64,000 bases of DNA, from IMG/VR virus record IMGVR_UViG_3300032214_000715, positions 1-64,000 of that record; one strand, given 5' to 3'. The position numbers and the translations under genes are program-made. Positions 3,731-62,931 of this stretch are shown here, one piece after another. Within the stretch, counting starts at the first letter, position 1. Every line of letters begins with the position of its first letter. The notes beneath the pieces were generated by a model. It was not told the DNA's origin. It worked only from the letters and a program-made list of their open reading frames with translations, and made no database searches.

Positions 3731-4053
3731 ACTATGAAAAACCAGCAGAAGGTATCCTAAAAACCAATGATTGGGGTAACTCAAAAGTATACAAAGTAGT
3801 TTGTCATTGCGGTAGTGACGGTCATGATCATGATGTTTGGGTAGAAGCAGACCGGTATGATGTAACTGTTACTATATACACTAACGTAAAAAGCAATTGG
3901 CGAGTAAATCGGTTCCGTCAAATTTGGGACTTGTTGACTAAAGGTTATTCACAACACAGTGTAGACATTTCTCTAACTCAACAACAGGCGTTTAATTATT
4001 CTCTGACTCTACAGGAAGCAATTAAAGACGTTGAGTCTTTTAGAAAACAATGA
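3721..4053 (+). CDS. Hypothetical protein
   Basis: 110 aa coupled ORF. Confidence 0.6.
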   Translation: MDLNYEKPAEGILKTNDWGNSKVYKVVCHCGSDGHDHDVWVEADRYDVTVTIYTNVKSNWRVNRFRQIWDLLTKGYSQHSVDISLTQQQAFNYSLTLQEAIKDVESFRKQ

Positions 4054-4062
4054 CTCTTCATA

Positions 4063-4284
4063 ATGGTCATCCGATCACCAGAACACGAAGTTATTTTTGG
4101 TAAGAAAAATCATCAGAGACAAATTGACTGGTGTACTGAAAAGTTTGGCAAACGATGGAGTGTAATAGATAATCGTGAAGGGACTTGGACCTGCTTTTGG
4201 GCAGGTGTAGATTCTCCTAGAAACTATCGTTGGTTATTTAAAGACGAAAAAGATTTGGTAATGTTTGTATTGAGGTGGATGTGA
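4063..4284 (+). CDS. Small hypothetical, FxLRW family
   Basis: WCTEKFG...FKDEKDLVMFVLRWM. Confidence 0.7.
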   Translation: MVIRSPEHEVIFGKKNHQRQIDWCTEKFGKRWSVIDNREGTWTCFWAGVDSPRNYRWLFKDEKDLVMFVLRWM

Positions 4285-4472
4285 TTACGATACGATATCC
4301 GGACGAACACGATTTTTTGATTGTGTATAAGTGGTGTCAAGATAACTGCCGCGGCAAATTCTATAGTGGAACAGATTGGGATATTCAACGCTGGCAATCA
4401 GACAACCAAAATCGTATATATCAATTTGATTCTGAAGAGGATGCAGCACTATTTGTATTGAGGTGGTCATGA
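4281..4472 (+). CDS. Small hypothetical, FxLRW family (GTG start)
   Basis: WCQDNC...FDSEEDAALFVLRWS; GTGA overlap. Confidence 0.7.
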   Translation: MITIRYPDEHDFLIVYKWCQDNCRGKFYSGTDWDIQRWQSDNQNRIYQFDSEEDAALFVLRWS

Positions 4473-56477: not shown

Positions 56478-57347
56478 TTTATTTATTACGTTTACGCATA
56501 CCTCAGAAAAGATGGCACACCCTACTACATTGGTAAGGGTAAAGGTTACAGGGCGTGGATAGATCACCGTAAAAAGAAGAATGGAAAACTTATTGGAGTA
56601 TCAACACCAACAGACAGAAGTCGAATAGTTCTTCTAGAGACTAATCTGAGTGAAGTTGGAGCATTGGCGTTGGAGCGTAGATACATCATTTGGTATGGAC
56701 GCAAAGACAACAAGACAGGAATCCTTAGAAACCTTACCAATGGTGGTGAAGGATTGTCAGGAATAGTTAGAGATCCTGTAAAATTTATGGGGGAAAAGAA
56801 TGGAATGTATGGTAAAAATCATACAGAGAAAGTTCGCACTGAGCACTCTCAAAGAATGCTTGGGAACAAGAATGGGTGTGGATGGGAACCTACTCCCGAG
56901 CAGCTTGCCAAGATGAGGCATCGTGCAAAAAACAGAGAACAGAAAGTCTGTCCTCATTGTGGAAAGAGTGTCAGCGGATCAAATTACACACGTTGGCATG
57001 GTGACAACTGTAGAGTTATTTTAGATCCAGTATTACTGGAGAAACGTGGATCAAAGTTTAGAAAAGAAAAGATAAAGTGCTTATATTGCGATGGTGAATT
57101 TATACCATGTAGGTATCATGAACTGCACGGGGAAAATTGTTCTAAAAGTCCTTCTAAAATTGCCACGCGAGAAGAGAATAGAAGAAGATCGTTAGACTTG
57201 AGACCAGAGTATACATGTGAATACTGTAGTATAAAGACAAAGACCCGCACCAACTACACGAGATGGCACGGGCCTAATTGCAAGGACAGTATCAGATGTC
57301 GTAGCGAGGAATCATTACTGCCTTCCTCATTACAAATTCTGGGGTGA
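56475..57347 (+). CDS. GIY-YIG-like homing endonuclease with CxxC-NYxRWHGxxC zinc repeats
   Basis: [18 protein letters not shown]; NLTNGGEG; three C-terminal Zn repeats. Confidence 0.8.
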
Positions 57348-58719
57348 ACTGCTCACTGTCTCCACTCAGCACTGCACTAGCGATAGCAGGTGAGAACCCA
57401 CTAACCAGTGCAACACCGCTCTCATCAAACTTGGCAGGTGCATGTCCTGAATGGTTTAGGTTCCAGAAAACGATGCGGGGCACTTGATAACCTGCTTCTT
57501 CGTATTGACGAGCGATCATTTGCATGGCACTCTCGGATACGCTTACAGACTGGTCAAAATTCATGTCACTTAGGATCACCAGAGTTCCTGGCATCTCAGA
57601 CTGACCTACGCCAGCATTGACTGCGGTTCTCAGGATCAACTCCATGGCCGCGTTCAAGTTGGTGTTCATGCCCCAATCACTCCTAGTCATCTGAGCGATC
57701 TTCTCGGTGATAGTGCCCTTCAAACGCAGCAGTTCCGGTTGTGCGCTGAAGGTCAGAAAACAGTCCTTGAATACGCCACTGTTCTTGTCAGCGAAGTACA
57801 GACCAAGACTCACAGCAACATCCATGCAAGACAACTCGCTCTTACTGTTACGACCACCGACCTTACAGGTCATACTGCCACTAACGTCTACTAGAGGCAG
57901 AACACTAGCGTCACCGATGAAGTCGGGCAGTGCAGCCCACTGTGCTTCAATCACCGCGATCTCATCAGCAGAGACTTCACTCTCACGCATCCAAGTGTCG
58001 ATAGGGGTGATGTGACCCTTCAACACATCATAGGGGTATACTGCGCTGGCCGAAATTTTTACACCGTCCTCACCCTTGATCAGAGACTGGACATACTCAC
58101 TGTACTTGGCTGTGTTGCGACCAAAAGCCTTCTTGTAACGTGCGTGAGCAACACTAGGAACATGGCTGAAGTTGATGTTGTCCCAGTCCTTGGCGCACAT
58201 CTGGGACTCCACGACCTTAGTCAGACCGACCAACATCTTGCGGTAAGCCTTAGGGCTCAGACCCATGAAGACGCGCAGTTCCAGTGCCAGCGGACCCTGA
58301 CGAGGCATCCACTTCGCGCACAGTCCGTTTCCAGACTTCAGCGCATCACTGATCATGGTGTATGCTACCTGCTTGAGTTCAGGTGTCATTACGACCAACA
58401 GATCGTCCCAACGGCCCAACTCAGGCAACTTGGTCATAAGACGCATTGCGTCCTGTGGGTAGTACTGCTCCATGTGAAGCAGAATGTCCCGAACCAGTTG
58501 TCGTTCGCCGCTACCACCACGAGCATCACGGATCCACTGTACCACGCGCAGTGTCAGTTCGCTGTCCTGCACGTATGCAGCTACGAACTTAGGCACAATG
58601 CCAACACCACGGGTAGCGCCGTAGAACAGGTCTATCACAGCGTTAGCGGTAGCCACACGTGCTACCATACCGTTCTCGGTAACGGTCAGTTGATTGTCGA
58701 TTGCTTGTGCGAATGTCAT
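57292..58719 (-). CDS. DUF2828-type vWA protein, Ro60/TROVE-related
   Basis: [44 protein letters not shown]. Confidence 0.85.
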
Positions 58720-58734
58720 TTATTTTTTCCTTTC

Positions 58735-58823
58735 AACAGATTAGTTATCATTGGTCCTATCACGGTCTCCAGCCAGATTCGGGCTTTTTTATAGTGATTA
58801 AAATTGGTTGCTGGATCTAATCT
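58735..58823 (-). ncRNA. Y-RNA-like element A
   Basis: AGAUUAG-AUC-CAGCAA...CUAAUCU-GUU. Confidence 0.6.
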
Positions 58824-58872
58824 AAGAACTTATTATATGTTACTTACTATTTTTAGTCTACAAATTCGGATA

Positions 58873-58989
58873 AACTGTATACGTTTCTTGCCTGCTGCTC
58901 TGCCGACTGAGCTACATCTCACATTTGAGAGATGGAAGGACTCGAACCTTCGACACACTGGGTGATTTAATCGTTGCTGTATGTATACA
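58873..58989 (-). ncRNA. YrlA-like Y RNA (circularly permuted tRNA mimic), element B
   Basis: UGUAUAC-AUA-CAGCAA; T arm GAAGG-UUCGAGU-CCUUC; looped acceptor CAUCUC/GAGAUG; D arm GCUC-AGUCGGCA-GAGC; GUAUACA-GUU. Confidence 0.75.
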
Positions 58990-59129
58990 AAAATATAACA
59001 GGATGATCGATACGGGTATTTTATTTCTCTGCTTGCCCCTTACACTAAAGGATTTTGTATCACAAGCACAGTCTAAATCGTTTAGACCCGATCCTAGTAT
59101 CTTGACTAGACACAAAGTTGGCTAACCCC

Positions 59130-59187
59130 AACAGGACGATTAGTTGACTAATCAGTTCAGAGTATTTTAAATTGCCGAAATCATCCT
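59130..59187 (-). ncRNA. Y-RNA-like element C (alternative distal 3' partner at 58997-59007)
   Basis: AGGAUGAU-UU-CGGCAA...AUCGUCCU-GUU. Confidence 0.55.
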
Positions 59188-59195
59188 AATCAAAT

Positions 59196-59348
59196 AACGG
59201 GATAGTTGTTGCCTTCTTTTATTCAAGTGAGAAATGCTAGACTCACCTCGACCGGATAAACATAAAACGCTTCACAGGTTGCCCTCTGCAAGATATGTCT
59301 ACTTTGCCCAGTCCATCCATAATTTTATGAATTTGCTGTACCTATCCC
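59196..59348 (-). ncRNA. Y-RNA-like element D
   Basis: GGGAUAG-GUA-CAGCAA...CUAUCCC-GUU. Confidence 0.6.
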
Positions 59349-59381
59349 AAATCTCTTTGTTGTTACGATAGATGTATTATG

Positions 59382-59594
59382 TCATCGTTTACTATTCATT
59401 TCAAGCATTTTGGATGACTTGCTTTCTTTGACCTTGACCAAATTGGCAAGATTCATCCAAACTAAACGCTGATTGTCCGGGCGATGAACCTCAACGAAGT
59501 CCACGCCATCTACACGCCTACGATTATCAAAATTCTCGCATACCCATACTTCACCGGTACGTGGATTAGATAGAGTCACTGACTTTGCCTTCAT
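59382..59594 (-). CDS. Hypothetical protein
   Basis: AAGGAG SD; MKAKSVTLSNPRTGEVW. Confidence 0.55.
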   Translation of the reverse strand: MKAKSVTLSNPRTGEVWVCENFDNRRRVDGVDFVEVHRPDNQRLVWMNLANLVKVKESKSSKMLEMNSKR

Positions 59595-59604
59595 AGTTTT
59601 CTCC

Positions 59605-60090
59605 TTACGCTGTCTGACGACGAGATTCCAAACTTTTGAATTGATCCGCAGCATACGATGCCGCAAAAGCACGAGGTTTCACAAATGGAATTACTCCACA
59701 CATGCCCTTAACGTAACCAATGGCTTCATTGATAACGAGATTGCTATTGTGAAACTCACTTGGATTTAGGTCCAAGTGAACTTCTACCTCAAATGGCACT
59801 TCCTTGGCTAGTTCTAGATAAAGATTGGCTACACGATATACTTCATTCATTAATCGCATGCGTGGCTTATCCGCACGTTGATCGTAGTCACGTTCACGAT
59901 CCACTGCGCCGAAAATCTTACAACCATTATTGCCGTTTACGTGAATAACTACAGCGGTAATATAATCAGCATACCAGACATTGTTATGCTGTAGGCGTTC
60001 ACTGTCACAGCCAATATAAATTTTAGTGTTGTCGGACAGATTTTCACAAAACGTCACAACTTCATCAATGTCAATATGCTTCTTATACAT
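59605..60090 (-). CDS. RNase H-like YkuK (DUF458) family protein
   Basis: IYIGCDS, RLMNEV, EVHLDLNP, KP.AFAAS.AAD. Confidence 0.8.
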   Translation of the reverse strand: MYKKHIDIDEVVTFCENLSDNTKIYIGCDSERLQHNNVWYADYITAVVIHVNGNNGCKIFGAVDRERDYDQRADKPRMRLMNEVYRVANLYLELAKEVPFEVEVHLDLNPSEFHNSNLVINEAIGYVKGMCGVIPFVKPRAFAASYAADQFKSLESRRQTA

Positions 60091-60101
60091 TTTAGTCTCC
60101 T

Positions 60102-60389
60102 TTAAAAAACATCATGCCTCTTTGGTTTATTTCTTTCACTTCTATCTTTGATTTTACCTAGATACTCTCGCCCAACTGCGCCAGACTCAATATCATCAAA
60201 TACAATCTTAGTGGGAATACTTTTTAGCTTGCGCTGCTCCAAATACGTAGACACGTTCATGTCACTGTACTTCATAGCATCGTCTTCTTGCTTACGCACA
60301 CGATGTATTTCCCTCAATCGCTCACTGGCAACTAGAATCAAATCGAATCTGTTGCCGATGCGATCACACATTTTATCAAAATCATTCAT
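60102..60389 (-). CDS. rpoZ: RNA polymerase omega subunit (RpoZ) homolog
   Basis: IGNRFDLILVASERLREI matches RpoZ N-terminal signature; TTGACA-16-TATAAT promoter 60415-60442. Confidence 0.65.
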   Translation of the reverse strand: MNDFDKMCDRIGNRFDLILVASERLREIHRVRKQEDDAMKYSDMNVSTYLEQRKLKSIPTKIVFDDIESGAVGREYLGKIKDRSERNKPKRHDVF

Positions 60390-60472
60390 TATTAGTCCTA
60401 TCAAAGTTATTATAATTATACACAAGCATCAACCGATGTCAAGCAGTATTTTACTATTTACTAAATAATAGT

Positions 60473-60637
60473 ATGGCATCACGCACTGTATACACGCTAA
60501 ACGGTCTTACTTTTCACGTAAGCATAAGTGATATGAGCACTTATTGTATTATAATACTTGATCGTTACACTGGTGACGTTGATATTAAGTACTTCAGTGA
60601 TTGGTATGAAGCACTAATGTACATTAAAGAATTTTAA
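60473..60637 (+). CDS. 54-aa late ORF (below cutoff)
   Basis: CTAAATA 60461-60467; MASRTVYTLNG...MYIKEF. Confidence 0.4.
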   Translation: MASRTVYTLNGLTFHVSISDMSTYCIIILDRYTGDVDIKYFSDWYEALMYIKEF

Positions 60638-60825
60638 TTAGCAATTAATTCTCTAAGCTTAAGCAATTGTGTCGGCGTCAGCACCATTTCAAACCGCATT
60701 TCTGTATTGTCATTCCATTGAGTGTAAAAACGCAAATGTTGAAATTCGGGACCGACCGAAATTGGCTGAGTCAACTCAGCATATACACGATAATTTCCAT
60801 TTTCACTAATTAGAACTTTGCTCAT
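60634..60825 (-). CDS. Hypothetical protein
   Basis: AAGG SD; downstream of tRNA. Confidence 0.55.
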   Translation of the reverse strand: MSKVLISENGNYRVYAELTQPISVGPEFQHLRFYTQWNDNTEMRFEMVLTPTQLLKLRELIAN

Positions 60826-60841
60826 ATTATACCTTTATGTT

Positions 60842-60931
60842 TGGCGGATAGTGTGAGATTCGAACTCACGATAGAATTTCTCCTATGACGGTTTAGTAGA
60901 CCGTTGGTTTCAGCCGCTCACCCAACTATCC
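60842..60931 (-). tRNA. tRNA-Ser, anticodon ACU, class II
   Basis: GGATAGT/ACTATCC acceptor, G73-CCA, ACGGT-CTACTAA-ACCGT, long variable arm, GTGAG-TTCGAAT-CTCAC. Confidence 0.9.
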
Positions 60932-60974
60932 TTTAGATATATTTACTACGCGAGACAAACGCTAAAATATTTTA

Positions 60975-61577
60975 CTACACAGTTTGTTGACGCTGTTCTA
61001 ACTTTTTGCGAAGCATGGTATGAATGCCAGGATTCACTCTGAGTACATCAGCCATAAGTTTATGCCTAATAAAATTCCTAGTATAACGAGTATCGTTATT
61101 AGAATGATCCTCAATCCACTTAACATTTTTGCGTCTCGCCCAATCTTCTAATTCATACTTTCTATTTAATAGAAATGGTCTGATAACGTTGCCACGACGA
61201 TATGGGATCAAGCTACTGGTTCCATGTAAACTACTCCACACCCAAGTCTCAGCTACATCATCTAAATGATGAGCAGTGACTACAGTATCAAATTGATTTA
61301 GAAAATTATATCGTTCCTCACGCCAATGTTCTTCTGGACTTTGCTCACGATCACGATGAACTTTTGTCATTTCACCAATATGTAATGCTACATTATTTTT
61401 TGAGCAAAAATCAGTTAAAAACTCCTGAGCACGATTACTGTTTTCGGTGTTATGATTAAAGAAAGCAGCATCGACGTTATGATTTCGTTGTAAGAAATCT
61501 AACAATACCATACTGTCAATGCCACCACTAAGTGCCACGGTCAACTTTCTGGGCAATGATCCTAAAACTTTGATCAT
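60975..61577 (-). CDS. tilS: tRNA(Ile)-lysidine synthase, catalytic domain only
   Basis: ALSGGIDS PP-loop, AHHLDD.AET, IRPFL, ED.SN....TRNFIRH. Confidence 0.9.
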   Translation of the reverse strand: MIKVLGSLPRKLTVALSGGIDSMVLLDFLQRNHNVDAAFFNHNTENSNRAQEFLTDFCSKNNVALHIGEMTKVHRDREQSPEEHWREERYNFLNQFDTVVTAHHLDDVAETWVWSSLHGTSSLIPYRRGNVIRPFLLNRKYELEDWARRKNVKWIEDHSNNDTRYTRNFIRHKLMADVLRVNPGIHTMLRKKLEQRQQTV

Positions 61578-61658
61578 ACTACATCACAACACTGTTTCCA
61601 TTACAGAATTTAAGTATAACATAATAAAAGAAAAACGCAAGAACTATCTTGTTCAAAT

Positions 61659-61730
61659 GATAAATAAAAGTGTCAGTCGCGATACGTCAATATCCACTGA
61701 CTCTAACGCTTTTTGGGAGCATCAGCAATG
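61659..61730 (+). promoter_or_regulatory. Late promoter plus structured leader of GIY-YIG gene (copy 3)
   Basis: ATAAATA; GTCAGT/ACTGAC stem; GATA/TATC inner; GCT/AGC over GGAG; CAGCAATG. Confidence 0.7.
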
Positions 61731-62339
61731 TATTTACACTATATCATCTATCGTGTCCAACATAAAAATGGACACTACTATATTGGACGACACGCTACAA
61801 ATAATCTCAACGATGATTATATTGGTAGCGGCACTTGGTCCAGAAGCATAAAAAATCCAAACAATGTTAGCAGAATCATTTTGGAAGTTTGCCAAAATGA
61901 ACAGCACTACATTGAGCGAGAACAATACTATTTGGATTTACATTTTGGCAAGCCTGGATGTATGAACCAAAGTAATAGGGCTACAGGATTTCCCTGCGGT
62001 GAAGCACACCATATGAAACAGCCCAAAAATAGACTCAAACATTCTATTCGCCAAAAGTCTTTAGGTAGTAATCATCATTTTAATACTCCAGAGAATCGCG
62101 AGCGTATGCGTATCAACAACCCCGGATCATTCCCAGAGAATCGTGCTCGTGCCTCTAAACAACTATTAGAAAACAATCCAATGTATGATCCTGTAGCATT
62201 AGCAAAGATAAGCGGTGAAAATCATTGGACAAAAAACAATGCCCACTTAAAAACTTGTGAGCATTGTAGTATTGCCGACATATCCAAATCGAACTACACC
62301 CGATGGCACGGTCCCAAATGTAAGTCTATTACATTGTAG
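61728..62339 (+). CDS. GIY-YIG homing endonuclease-like
   Basis: IIYRVQHKNGHYYIGRH, YIGSG, E.E..Y; C-terminal CEHC...[10 protein letters not shown]. Confidence 0.8.
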   Translation: MYLHYIIYRVQHKNGHYYIGRHATNNLNDDYIGSGTWSRSIKNPNNVSRIILEVCQNEQHYIEREQYYLDLHFGKPGCMNQSNRATGFPCGEAHHMKQPKNRLKHSIRQKSLGSNHHFNTPENRERMRINNPGSFPENRARASKQLLENNPMYDPVALAKISGENHWTKNNAHLKTCEHCSIADISKSNYTRWHGPKCKSITL

Positions 62340-62931
62340 GACCGTTTCCACTCTTAAAGCCCACAGAGCCACCTTGTTCCGTAATCCTCTTTAAGGCATC
62401 CTCAAAAAGGATAGGAGCAAAGTCTGTTTGTTCAACACAGGCACACCAGTATCTTGGATCTATCTCATCGCTGTATAAGATTTCACCAGTTCGGGCATCG
62501 ACACCTCTCGCCTTCATAACTCTGTTGGCGTGTAAGTGTCCGTGTATGTTACACGCCATCCTACCAAGGCTTGCTTCGTGGACAGGAATATGACTTAAAA
62601 TAAGTCCATTCATCACATGGTAGGCACGTAATTCTCTAAAGTACTGCCTGTACTCGTCATCACGAAAGATGTCGTGATTACCACGAATCAATACCTTGTC
62701 GCCGTTTAAGCGGGCTAATGTCTTTAAACTCTTACGATTGATAACCACATCGCCTAGGTGATATACCTTATCACTAGGTTTAACCCGTTCGTTCCAAGCC
62801 TTAACCATGTACTCGTCCATTTCTTCAGCGCAACTAAATGGGCGCAGTGAGCTACCATCTTCGCGCTTAAATACGGTACATGTCTTTTCGTGCCCGAAAT
62901 GCGTATCACTAATTAACCATACTGCTGGCAT
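62329..62931 (-). CDS. Calcineurin-like metallophosphoesterase
   Basis: SDTHFGH, HLGD, GNHD, SHIP, HGHLH. Confidence 0.9.
   Translation of the reverse strand: MPAVWLISDTHFGHEKTCTVFKREDGSSLRPFSCAEEMDEYMVKAWNERVKPSDKVYHLGDVVINRKSLKTLARLNGDKVLIRGNHDIFRDDEYRQYFRELRAYHVMNGLILSHIPVHEASLGRMACNIHGHLHANRVMKARGVDARTGEILYSDEIDPRYWCACVEQTDFAPILFEDALKRITEQGGSVGFKSGNGPTM

What the first reader, a model, noticed from the sequence alone, without database searches (positions are those of the whole stretch)
58873..58989. Circularly permuted tRNA mimic (YrlA-type) with a sealed acceptor stem
Seen on the minus strand: the T arm (GAAGG-UUCGAGU-CCUUC) comes first, then an acceptor-like helix closed by a loop (CAUCUC-UCAAAUGU-GAGAUG), then the D arm (UA-GCUC-AGUCGGCA-GAGC). 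An imperfect anticodon-stem equivalent (CCAGU/GCAGG) leads into the Y-like closing stem. There is no CCA and no anticodon loop. Known: this order is the hallmark of YrlA Y RNAs, which mimic the tRNA elbow. Inference: it could decoy host anticodon nucleases, T-box or ribosome sensors, or tRNA-modifying enzymes.
Basis: partly seen in the sequence, partly recalled or inferred. Interest (0 to 1): 0.75.

Follow-up and report, generated by a model that had tools for sequence, protein, structure and literature searches.

The report
Phage tRNA-mimic Y-like RNA cassette
A 117-base phage RNA gene folds like a circularly permuted tRNA clamped in a Y-RNA-type stem beside a Ro60-like protein gene. It is one cassette of a large family of phage RNAs, undescribed in the papers I could search, that display tRNA parts on a shared scaffold.

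Summary
The order is closing stem, T arm, sealed 6-bp acceptor hairpin, U8A9, D arm, imperfect anticodon-stem equivalent. Rfam YrlA matches only the tRNA-like core (34.8 bits, threshold 69). In 21 homologous elements, 97% of cells pair and 19 of 23 pairs show compensatory change. The tertiary 15:48 pair covaries (G:C, A:U, U:A).

The gene 154 nt downstream (DUF2828+DUF7788) is Ro60-like by predicted fold only. So this is a YrlA-type tRNA mimic by architecture, but not a member of the YrlA family. The Ro60-binding motif GNCGAA is absent. A different scaffold replaces it: a 7-bp stem, N3, CAGCAA, an A-rich strand, the 3' stem strand and GUU.

That scaffold marks at least four tandem units in this intergenic region. 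It also marks 216 units around the homologous gene in 80 related phage contigs, against 19 on the antisense strand and 8 in shuffles. Many short units carry only an anticodon-arm mimic. The scaffold resembles Dictyostelium Class I RNAs below threshold.

Most likely it is a Y-RNA-like partner of the Ro60-like protein, with a tRNA-like module that engages a tRNA-recognising factor. Binding and function are inferred, not shown.

The parts
58873..58989 (-). tRNA-like scaffold unit (the finding): closing stem, CAGCAA motif, permuted tRNA-like module, 3' GUU
   Evidence: Sequence. Model R1 scores it 117 bits. Covariation. Pattern scan.
58983..58989 (-). closing stem, 5' strand (UGUAUAC); pairs with 58876-58882
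   Evidence: Helix 1 of A6: 98% of cells paired, 5 of 8 pairs with compensatory change.
58974..58979 (-). CAGCAA, the conserved single-stranded scaffold motif and the putative protein-binding site
   Evidence: Invariant in A2. Position profile over 162 units.
58935..58951 (-). T arm GAAGG-UUCGAGU-CCUUC
   Evidence: Rfam YrlA alignment. 100% of cells paired, 4 of 5 pairs compensatory.
58915..58934 (-). sealed acceptor-like hairpin, 6 bp with an 8-nt loop
   Evidence: All 6 pairs show compensatory change across homologues.
58897..58914 (-). U8 A9 and D arm GCUC-AGUCGGCA-GAGC (A14, G15, G18, G19, A21 present)
   Evidence: G15 pairs with C48 (58952), and that pair covaries across the family.
58891..58895 (-). 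GCAGG, 5' strand of the anticodon-stem equivalent; pairs imperfectly with CCAGU at 58957-58961
   Evidence: 72.7% of cells paired in 7 elements of this subtype; the inner pairs are conserved or compensated.
58876..58882 (-). closing stem, 3' strand (GUAUACA), followed by GUU at 58873-58875
59196..59348 (-). scaffold unit 1 (153 nt): GGGAUAG-GUA-CAGCAA...CUAUCCC-GUU, with a conserved 150-170-nt insert class
   Evidence: Alignment A7 with 13 homologues.
59130..59187 (-). scaffold unit 2 (58 nt) with the variant motif CGGCAA
   Evidence: Model R2 scores it 28.9 bits, E = 2.5e-4.
58997..59096 (-). possible degenerate unit (AGGAUCG-GGU-CUAAAC ... CGAUCAUCCU-GUU); boundaries uncertain
   Evidence: Reading only. 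It fails the strict pattern scan.
58735..58823 (-). scaffold unit 5 (89 nt): AGAUUAG-AUC-CAGCAA...CUAAUCU-GUU. It ends 15 nt before the ATG of the Ro60-like gene.
   Evidence: Model R2 scores it 39.5 bits, E = 4.8e-7.
57292..58719 (-). 475-aa Ro60-like protein (DUF2828 + DUF7788/vWA with a MIDAS motif DxSGS)
   Evidence: Pfam and PHROG matches. Invariant D278/S280/G281/S282. The AF2 model matches phage and bacterial Ro60 structures.
59376..59404 (-). promoter-like site TTGAAA-17-(TG)CATAAT upstream of unit 1
   Evidence: Consensus match only.
58832..58860 (-). promoter-like site TAGACT-17-TATAAT between the tRNA-like unit and unit 5
   Evidence: Consensus match only.

Best explanation
The element is a small non-coding RNA of the Y-RNA kind that partners with the Ro60-like ring protein encoded just downstream. 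It is modular.

The scaffold is a 7-bp terminal stem, the single-stranded N3-CAGCAA on the 5' side, an A-rich 3' strand and a GUU tail. It is the common handle, and it most likely docks on the protein as the stem and 5'-strand motif of Y RNAs dock on Ro60.

The insert is the effector module. Here it is an L-shaped tRNA mimic that shows the D/T-loop elbow and an acceptor-like helix, with no anticodon loop and no CCA end. It most likely engages a factor that recognises the tRNA body, such as RNase P, elbow-binding modification or repair enzymes, or a host tRNA-targeting toxin. It would then tether that factor to the ring protein or titrate it.

Sibling units on the same scaffold display anticodon-arm mimics. 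As a set, the RNP would therefore address tRNA metabolism during infection, either tRNA quality control and repair or counter-defence against tRNA-cleaving host systems.

Shown here: the conserved structure, the tRNA-like tertiary signature, the shared scaffold, tight linkage to the gene, and the Ro60-like fold. Inferred: protein binding, trans action, the nature of the recruited factor and the biological role.
For: Structure:
- Covariation in all four helices.
- The 15:48 tertiary pair covaries as G:C x10, A:U x5, U:A x2.
- Rfam YrlA hits the tRNA-like core.

Partner:
- The AF2 model of the adjacent protein matches Thermus phage phiLo Ro60 (9kop, E = 4.5e-10; 9l5y) and D. radiodurans Rsr (2nvo, 7e-8) over its full length.
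- It also matches Swiss-Prot Ro60 of Xenopus, Deinococcus, mouse and human, and Tetrahymena p80.
- The MIDAS residues are invariant.

Linkage:
- 216 scaffold units lie on the gene's strand in 80 related loci, against 19 antisense and 8 in shuffles.
- 69 of 72 loci with enough upstream sequence have a unit ending within 200 nt of the start codon, with a modal gap of 20-29 nt.
- The scaffold persists next to homologues down to 33% identity, and in cultured Mycobacterium phage Rumpelstiltskin and Synechococcus phage BUCT-ZZ01.

Modularity:
- Inserts range from 52 to 240 nt on one scaffold.
- 27 of 61 short units carry a canonical anticodon-loop hairpin, against 1.3 expected.
- A close relative lacks exactly this unit, with the junction at 58989.

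Precedent:
- Y RNAs are modular tethers and gates for Ro60, and YrlA is a tRNA mimic (PMC4201824; bioRxiv 10.1101/312249).
- Phage phiLo Ro60 binds two upstream Y-like RNAs (PMC12135203).

Expression hint:
- Metatranscriptome contigs of a relative cover the array at depth 14-47. They cover the protein gene at depth 0-8 and the upstream genes at 0.
Against: - No binding evidence exists. The complex prediction was not run for RNA.
- The protein is Ro60-like by predicted fold only. There is no Pfam TROVE match and no sequence match to solved Ro60 structures.
- The scaffold lacks the Ro60 motif GNCGAA, so binding cannot be carried over by homology.
- The transcriptome evidence comes from a relative that lacks this very unit, and DNA carry-over is not excluded.
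- Two scaffold units lie inside the distant tRNA gene cluster, not next to the protein gene.
- Felix O1-like phages have the protein but no detectable scaffold. The RNA and the protein are therefore not obligatorily linked.
- The record holds no RtcB or Rnl2-type ligase that would support a repair role. The record is about 68% complete.
Confidence: 0.62

Rival explanations
1. The units are stand-alone decoys or sponges for host tRNA-targeting enzymes. The scaffold is a processing or stability module, for example for excision from tRNA-type polycistrons, and is not a handle for the neighbouring protein.
For: Anticodon-arm mimics dominate the short units, with loops such as UGU, UGA, UCU and UUU. 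Two units sit between tRNA genes far from the protein gene. In relatives the locus is embedded in large tRNA arrays. Units are separated by regular spacers of about 7 nt.
Against: Linkage to the gene is very tight, down to 33% protein identity. An invariant single-stranded motif next to a stem is the typical signature of a protein-binding site. The neighbouring protein has the fold of a dedicated RNA-binding ring.
Confidence: 0.2
2. The units act in cis as a structured leader or operator of the Ro60-like mRNA, for example for autoregulation of translation, and are not trans-acting small RNAs.
For: The last unit ends 20-29 nt before the start codon in most loci, abutting the ribosome-binding site. 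In the window, unit 5 ends 15 nt before the ATG.
Against: This particular unit is 154 nt from the start codon, with a promoter-like site in between. Units also occur downstream of the gene and in tRNA clusters. A tRNA-like tertiary fold is not needed for an operator. This rival could hold for the promoter-proximal unit without excluding trans action by the others.
Confidence: 0.1
3. It is a permuted tRNA gene that is processed into a functional, aminoacylated tRNA through circularisation or cleavage at the acceptor loop.
For: Some family members keep a full cloverleaf with a canonical 7-nt anticodon loop. BUCT-ZZ01 carries open-acceptor, CCA-ended versions. M. smegmatis YrlA is cut by RNase P (bioRxiv 10.1101/312249).
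Against: This unit has no anticodon loop, a 6-bp acceptor helix and no CCA or discriminator base. ARAGORN calls no tRNA here. From my own knowledge, bacteria lack the splicing endonuclease and ligase pathway used for permuted tRNAs in red algae.
Confidence: 0.04
4. It is a chance juxtaposition or a decayed remnant of two tandem tRNA genes: the T arm of one and the D arm of the next.
For: Tandem tRNAs give weak YrlA-like hits elsewhere in this genome and in related loci. Chen et al. warn of this artefact (PMC4201824).
Against: The segment between the T and D arms forms a hairpin whose six pairs all covary. The closing stem covaries too. There are no flanking anticodon arms or acceptor strands. 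The element is conserved in 22 loci at the same position relative to the scaffold.
Confidence: 0.02

Closest known systems
YrlA Y RNAs of bacteria and mycobacteriophages (Rfam RF02553; Chen et al. 2014, PMC4201824; crystal structure 6CU1, bioRxiv 10.1101/312249)
   Same: The order is T arm, closed acceptor-like hairpin, D arm. The anticodon stem is formed by the two flanks and is imperfect or kinked. There is no CCA. The 15:48 pair covaries. The gene lies on the same strand, close to a gene for a Ro60-type ring protein. The design is modular, with a handle and an effector.
   Different: The Rfam score is half the threshold, and only the tRNA-like core aligns. The 5' motif GNCGAAN0-1G is replaced by N3-CAGCAA. 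The partner is a DUF2828/DUF7788 protein with no TROVE profile match. The RNA is one cassette in a tandem array of up to 8 units with other inserts. Some family members break the cloverleaf at position 26/27 and keep an intact anticodon arm.
Yrl1/Yrl2 and Ro60 of Thermus phage phiLo (PMC12135203; PDB 9KOP, 9L5Y)
   Same: A phage-encoded Ro60-type ring protein has several Y-like RNAs encoded just upstream. It is the best structural match of the protein model.
   Different: According to the paper, the phiLo RNAs carry the CGAA motif, and it reports no tRNA-like module. Sequence identity of the proteins is about 15-16% over the structural alignment.
Dictyostelium Class I RNAs (Rfam RF01414; Kjellin et al. 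2021, PMC7919456)
   Same: A short terminal stem whose structure, not sequence, is conserved. It is followed directly by a conserved unpaired motif ending in ...ACAGCAA, a variable hairpin, an A-rich 3' strand and a ...CUG(U) end. Short units are about 55-65 nt. The Rfam model gives full-length hits in the window's genome (35.4 bits, E = 5e-6) and in 5 of 5 related phage records at E <= 0.01. It gives none in 14 control genomes at that E.
   Different: All hits are below the threshold of 41.5 bits. The finding's own unit is not hit. The organisms are a eukaryote and phages. The known partner is an RRM protein (Rnp1A). Whether dictyostelids have a DUF2828 protein was not tested.
Circularly permuted tRNA genes of the red alga Cyanidioschyzon merolae (Soma et al. 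2007, as cited in bioRxiv 10.1101/312249)
   Same: The 3' half of the tRNA precedes the 5' half, and the acceptor stem is closed by a loop in the primary transcript.
   Different: Those genes yield functional tRNAs after circularisation and carry anticodon loops. This unit has no anticodon loop or CCA and lies in a bacteriophage.

Membership tests
YrlA (Rfam RF02553 / Chen et al. 2014) | Score at or above the Rfam gathering threshold (69 bits) over the whole model | tested here: not met
   34.8 bits, model positions 24-84 of 114 only. The homologous unit in Mycobacterium phage Rumpelstiltskin scores 21.4 bits.
YrlA (Rfam RF02553 / Chen et al. 2014) | Near-invariant T and D stem-loops with tRNA-conserved nucleotides, and a closed acceptor-like stem-loop between them | tested here: met
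   UUCGAGU T loop, G53:C61, U8 A9, A14, G18 G19, A21. Helices covary.
YrlA (Rfam RF02553 / Chen et al. 2014) | tRNA tertiary pairs can form, with compensatory change at the 15:48 Levitt pair | tested here: met
   G:C in 10, A:U in 5 and U:A in 2 of 20 distinct elements. 7 of 7 elements pair in A8.
YrlA (Rfam RF02553 / Chen et al. 2014) | GNCGAAN0-1G motif near the 5' end (proposed Ro60 contact) | tested here: not met
   None in the scaffold of any of 21 elements. The single GUCGAA in the window unit is the junction of variable loop and T stem. CAGCAA occupies the equivalent place.
YrlA (Rfam RF02553 / Chen et al. 2014) | Encoded within 4 kb of a TROVE-domain Ro60 orthologue, on the same strand | tested here: inconclusive
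   Same strand, 154 nt upstream. The protein has no Pfam TROVE match and no sequence match to solved Ro60. Its predicted fold matches Ro60 over its full length.
YrlA (Rfam RF02553 / Chen et al. 2014) | Bound by Ro60/Rsr in vivo; carries pseudouridine 55 and dihydrouridine | not testable with these tools
   Needs immunoprecipitation and modification mapping.
Dictyostelium Class I RNA (Rfam RF01414) | Score at or above the gathering threshold (41.5 bits) | tested here: not met
   The best sibling unit scores 35.4 bits (76605-76660 of the genome). The finding's unit is not hit, and unit 5 scores 14.5 bits.
Dictyostelium Class I RNA (Rfam RF01414) | 6-bp stem joining the 5' and 3' ends, with the 11-nt motif CCUUACAGCAA next to the 5' strand | tested here: inconclusive
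   The stem is present (7 bp). The motif shares (U)NCAGCAA, and the window unit reads C-AUACAGCAA. The upstream part and the spacing of the invariant U differ.
Dictyostelium Class I RNA (Rfam RF01414) | 42-65 nt long, dictyostelid origin, DUSE promoter element | tested here: not met
   The unit is 117 nt and lies in a phage record. Sibling short units are 52-70 nt.
Canonical or permuted tRNA gene | Anticodon stem with a 7-nt loop; 7-bp acceptor stem with discriminator base and CCA (encoded or addable) | tested here: not met
   No anticodon loop, a 6-bp sealed acceptor hairpin and no CCA. ARAGORN is negative.
Ro60/TROVE proteins (for the partner gene) | HEAT-repeat ring followed by a vWA domain with a MIDAS motif | tested here: met
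   The AF2 model (pLDDT 74, pTM 0.66) matches Ro60 structures at TM 0.54 and probability 1.00. DxSGS is invariant. This is a predicted structure, not a solved one.
Ro60/TROVE proteins (for the partner gene) | Match to the Pfam TROVE profile PF05731 | tested here: not met
   No match at E <= 1 in the whole record. Pfam assigns DUF2828 and DUF7788 instead.

The most novel reading that the evidence does not exclude
The CAGCAA-scaffold RNAs and DUF2828/DUF7788 proteins form an unrecognised and very widespread ribonucleoprotein class, parallel to Ro60 with Y RNA.

Its RNAs are a cassette library of tRNA parts: anticodon arms, elbow mimics and whole permuted cloverleaves. Phages would use them against tRNA-targeting host defences or for tRNA surveillance.

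Dictyostelium Class I RNAs, whose scaffold looks the same and whose function is unknown, would be the eukaryotic counterpart. They would pair with eukaryotic DUF2828 proteins.
Probability: 0.3. Interest if true: 0.9.

Novelty: new variant of a known kind. Interest (0 to 1): 0.74.

Why it matters
Y RNAs are understood as modular handles that give Ro60 rings new partners, but few effector modules are known. Here a single conserved handle carries many different inserts, and the recognisable ones are tRNA parts.

The partner protein family is a 'domain of unknown function'. It occurs in 694 cultured phage records and in about 5,900 protein clusters at 50% identity.

If the RNAs bind the protein, four things follow:
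- The family gains a function.
- The blocks of unannotated sequence next to phage tRNA arrays are explained.
- A concrete hypothesis arises for how phages deal with tRNA-cleaving defences.
- A testable lead appears for the Dictyostelium Class I RNAs, which have been reported as unique to social amoebae (PMC7919456).

Cultured systems that carry the units exist: Mycobacterium phage Rumpelstiltskin on M. smegmatis, and Synechococcus phage BUCT-ZZ01 on PCC 7942.

Tried and rejected
- **Complex prediction.** A protein-plus-RNA job was accepted but not folded, so it gives no evidence either way.
- **Sequence-level link to Ro60.** phmmer and a profile search against PDB chains found nothing. There is no Pfam TROVE match. 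Only the fold comparison connects the two.
- **Single-sequence folding.** The energy is not distinctive (z = -0.64 for 151 nt, -1.56 for the unit).
- **First regex for a T loop followed by a D arm.** It mostly returned tandem tRNA genes. I replaced it with covariance models.
- **Donor tRNA.** No tRNA in the same genome stands out; only generic T- and D-loop matches appear.
- **RNA repair context.** The record has no RtcB and no Rnl2-type ligase.
- **Transcription of the unit itself.** The only RNA run that holds related sequence comes from a relative lacking this unit.
- **Scan for 'closed' scaffold hairpins inside tRNAs.** Only the two cases in BUCT-ZZ01 stood out from noise.
- **Literature.** No paper in the searchable library links DUF2828 or DUF7788 to RNAs. 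Burroughs & Aravind 2016, Sim et al. 2020 and Avesson et al. 2011 could not be retrieved, and the supplements of Chen et al. 2014 are not held. A prior description therefore cannot be excluded. Some phage records already annotate the protein as 'Ro-like RNA binding protein' or 'putative Ro sixty-related protein'.
- **Dictyostelid DUF2828 proteins.** Whether they exist could not be checked with the available collections.

Full report
**1. The observation.**
The window is the first 64 kb of a 239-kb IMG/VR virus record, about 68% complete. On the minus strand, 58989-58873 reads as follows:

- UGUAUAC, AUA, CAGCAA
- a 12-nt linker
- CCAGU, GUGUC
- GAAGG-UUCGAGU-CCUUC
- CAUCUC-UCAAAUGU-GAGAUG
- UA
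- GCUC-AGUCGGCA-GAGC
- A, GCAGG
- an 8-nt A-rich linker
- GUAUACA, GUU

ARAGORN finds no tRNA here. At gathering thresholds Rfam finds only an ordinary tRNA-Ser at 60845-60931. At relaxed thresholds the only hit in 58500-59400 is YrlA. It scores 34.8 bits against a threshold of 69, with E = 1.1e-5, and covers model positions 24-84 of 114. That is the tRNA-like core without the Ro60-binding stem.

**2. It is a conserved structured RNA.**
The gene 154 nt downstream (57292-58719, minus strand, 475 aa) has 80 relatives in viral contigs at 54-63% identity. Six of them carried an obviously similar element. Their alignment showed compensatory changes in every helix.

A covariance model built from them (R1) found full-length matches of 37-123 bits in 22 of the 80 loci. 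All lie on the gene's strand.

On the 21 aligned elements (20 distinct):
- 97.4% of cells form standard pairs, against 69.5% in column shuffles and 35-46% with slid partners.
- 19 of 23 pairs show changes on both sides.
- 0 of 500 shuffles reach the observed values.

This alignment was fitted to the model, which favours the structure. The earlier MAFFT-only alignment gave the same picture, with 14 of 23 pairs compensatory among 6 sequences.

The tertiary Levitt pair covaries as G15:C48 (10), A15:U48 (5) and U15:A48 (2). U8, A9, A14, G18, G19, A21, A26, the UUCGAGU T loop and G53:C61 are all present in the window's copy. The anticodon-stem equivalent is weaker, with 72.7% of cells paired in 7 elements of the window's subtype. 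That recalls the kinked stem in the YrlA crystal structure (bioRxiv 10.1101/312249).

**3. The neighbour is a Ro60-like protein by fold only.**
Pfam assigns DUF7788 (1.5e-44) and DUF2828 (6.2e-23). PHROG 850 is labelled 'RNA-binding protein'. There is no TROVE profile match in the record and no sequence match to any solved structure.

An AlphaFold2 model (pLDDT 74, pTM 0.66) matches these over its full length:
- the Ro60 of Thermus phage phiLo (9kop, E = 4.5e-10; 9l5y) and D. radiodurans Rsr (2nvo)
- Swiss-Prot Ro60 of frog, Deinococcus, worm, mouse and human, and telomerase p80

The vWA MIDAS motif DxSGS is invariant. The family is large. It has 5,856 clusters at 50% identity and occurs in 694 cultured phage records. 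These include Felix O1-like, Listeria, Campylobacter, Staphylococcus and jumbo phages, and mycobacteriophages. Some curators already write 'Ro-like RNA binding protein'.

**4. The scaffold differs from YrlA and is shared by many other RNAs.**
YrlA, YrlB and the phiLo Yrl RNAs carry a GNCGAA/CGAA motif next to the terminal stem (PMC4201824, PMC12135203). Here that place holds N3-CAGCAA, and no member has GNCGAA in its scaffold.

The same handle recurs in tandem. It consists of a 7-bp stem, three bases, C(A)GCA(A), an insert, an A-rich strand, the 3' stem strand and GU(U). A pattern scan finds four units in the window's 660-nt intergenic region:
- 59348-59196
- 59187-59130
- 58823-58735

There may be a degenerate fifth unit between 59096 and 58997.

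In the 80 related loci there are 216 units on the gene's strand, 19 on the other strand and 8 after shuffling. They are 52-240 nt long and form arrays of up to 8. In 69 of 72 loci with enough upstream sequence, a unit ends within 200 nt of the start codon, usually 20-29 nt from it.

The unconstrained positions are strongly conserved: UUUU-AGG(A/U)U...(G)U(U)-CAGCAA and A(U/A)CCU-GUU.

The scaffold also accompanies more distant homologues:
- It persists down to 33% identity in MAG-binned contigs.
- It lies directly after gp54 of Mycobacterium phage Rumpelstiltskin. One of the units there is tRNA-like and scores only 21.4 bits on Rfam YrlA.
- It flanks the gene in Synechococcus phage BUCT-ZZ01.

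A short-unit model (R2) finds only four places in the whole 239-kb record. Two are next to the gene and two are between tRNA genes at 76.2 and 76.6 kb. Felix O1-like phage wV8 has the protein but no scaffold.

**5. What the inserts are.**
The tRNA-like inserts come in two topologies.
- In the window's type the anticodon stem is formed by the two flanks, as in YrlA.
- In others (L033, L017, L032, L046, L014) an intact anticodon hairpin precedes the variable loop, so the cloverleaf is opened at position 26/27. Its 7-nt loops include CUGAAAA, CUUGUAA, CUUAUAA and AUUCAAA.

Among 61 distinct short units, 27 contain as their only insert a 4-6-bp hairpin with a loop of the form YU-NNN-RN. Shuffled inserts would give 1.3. 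The most frequent 'anticodons' are UGU, UGA, UCU and UUU. A third conserved insert class of 150-170 nt includes the window's first unit.

The family therefore displays tRNA parts on one handle.

**6. Modularity and expression.**
Contigs of close relatives join 58790 to 58989 with 32 other letters between, in one RNA run and one DNA run. Those 32 letters are the 5' part of the relative's unit 5. These relatives therefore lack the tRNA-like unit and its spacer, and the junction falls at the unit's 5' boundary.

In the metatranscriptome, coverage is 14-47 on the array, 0-8 on the protein gene and 0 on the genes upstream. Two DNA runs cover the upstream genes evenly. This suggests transcription of the array in a relative. 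It does not concern this unit, and DNA carry-over or uneven conservation is not excluded.

Promoter-like sites lie upstream of unit 1 and between the tRNA-like unit and unit 5.

**7. Mechanism.**
The best-supported reading is a Y-RNA-type ribonucleoprotein. The handle docks on the Ro60-like ring. The tRNA-like module then recruits or titrates a factor that recognises the tRNA body. The sibling units do the same for factors that bind anticodon arms.

The structure, the linkage and the fold are shown. Binding, trans action and biological role are inferred. Rivals are listed with their evidence in the Rival explanations section:
- stand-alone decoys whose scaffold serves processing
- a cis-acting leader
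- a permuted tRNA gene that yields a real tRNA
- a remnant of tandem tRNAs

The last is contradicted by covariation.

**8. Comparison and novelty.**
By architecture this is a YrlA-type tRNA mimic. It is not a member of the family. It fails the Rfam threshold, the Ro60 motif and the TROVE-profile criterion, and it uses another handle.

That handle resembles Dictyostelium Class I RNAs, which have a short terminal stem...ACAGCAA, a variable hairpin and a CUG end. The Rfam model gives 35.4 bits (E = 5e-6) in this genome. It gives full-length sub-threshold hits in 5 of 5 related records, against 0 of 14 control genomes at E <= 0.01. Those RNAs were reported as unique to dictyostelids (PMC7919456). 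This is a resemblance, not a membership.

I found no paper that links DUF2828 or DUF7788 to RNAs.

Verdict: a new variant of a known kind, set in a family-level pattern that appears undescribed.

Noticed in passing
window 58735-59348 (-): The finding is one of at least four tandem RNA units on a common scaffold (7-bp stem, N3, CAGCAA ... stem, GUU). They fill the 660-nt gap between an upstream ORF and the Ro60-like gene. A possible degenerate fifth unit lies at about 58997-59096.
   Followed up: yes
own genome 76603-76661 (-) and 76168-76230 (-), outside the window; related loci L006-L085: Short scaffold units carry only an anticodon-arm mimic. The loop is CUUGUAA between the tRNA-Asp and tRNA-Ala genes, and CUUUUAA (Lys-UUU-like) at the second site. 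27 of 61 distinct short units have such a canonical 7-nt loop, against 1.3 expected.
   Followed up: yes
own genome 76605-76660 (-); related records of L019, L021, L023, L045, L082: The Rfam model of Dictyostelium Class I RNAs gives full-length, sub-threshold hits (up to 35.4 bits) to the short units. There are none in 14 control genomes at E <= 0.01. Whether dictyostelids have a DUF2828 protein was not checked.
   Followed up: partly
window 59196-59348 (-); e.g. L006:2696-2858, L035:2742-2910, L076:4401-4557: A second conserved insert class of 150-170 nt has shared blocks (CUGGAG...UUGAAGG, GGUGAGUUUCGA...CUCAC, AAAAGUAGACAAC). Its nature is unknown, and Rfam has no match for it.
   Followed up: partly
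window 58790/58989 junction: Close relatives in one metatranscriptome and one metagenome lack the tRNA-like unit and its spacer, with the break at the unit's 5' boundary. The RNA run covers the array far more deeply than the neighbouring genes.
   Followed up: partly
L112 about 4075-4320 (Synechococcus phage BUCT-ZZ01, ON615601): Two tandem tRNA-like genes have an open, CCA-ended acceptor stem. In them the scaffold appears as a closed hairpin (GCAUUCU-GUAA-AGAAUGA-AUU-CUGCAA) inserted after the D arm. This is the un-permuted counterpart of the finding. ARAGORN does not call them.
   Followed up: partly
L108:2088-2449 (contig binned to a Pacearchaeota MAG; protein 33% identical): Four scaffold units lie upstream of a distant homologue. 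One of them (2241-2361) encloses a tRNA-like sequence in normal, non-permuted order.
   Followed up: no
L111:3966-4225 (Mycobacterium phage Rumpelstiltskin, NC_023732): Three unannotated scaffold units lie directly after gp54, which is annotated 'RNA-binding protein'. The middle one (4027-4151) is tRNA-like. This is a cultured system for experiments.
   Followed up: partly
related loci L006-L085; own genome 73.6-87.6 kb: In relatives the Ro60-like gene is embedded in large tRNA gene arrays: 223 Rfam hits in 20 loci, and all 150 listed are tRNA. This genome has 27 ARAGORN calls, two of them with odd anticodon loops, and most lie 15-29 kb from the gene.
   Followed up: partly
window 59605-62931 (-): Upstream neighbours on the same strand are an RNaseH-like protein (PF04308), a tRNA-Ser with anticodon ACU (60842-60931), a PP-loop ATPase of the TilS/QueC type (60975-61577) and a metallophosphoesterase (62329-62931). 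This may be a tRNA-related neighbourhood.
   Followed up: no
L110 (Escherichia phage wV8, EU877232): A Felix O1-like phage has the DUF2828 protein next to its tRNA array, but no scaffold unit is detectable anywhere in the genome.
   Followed up: partly
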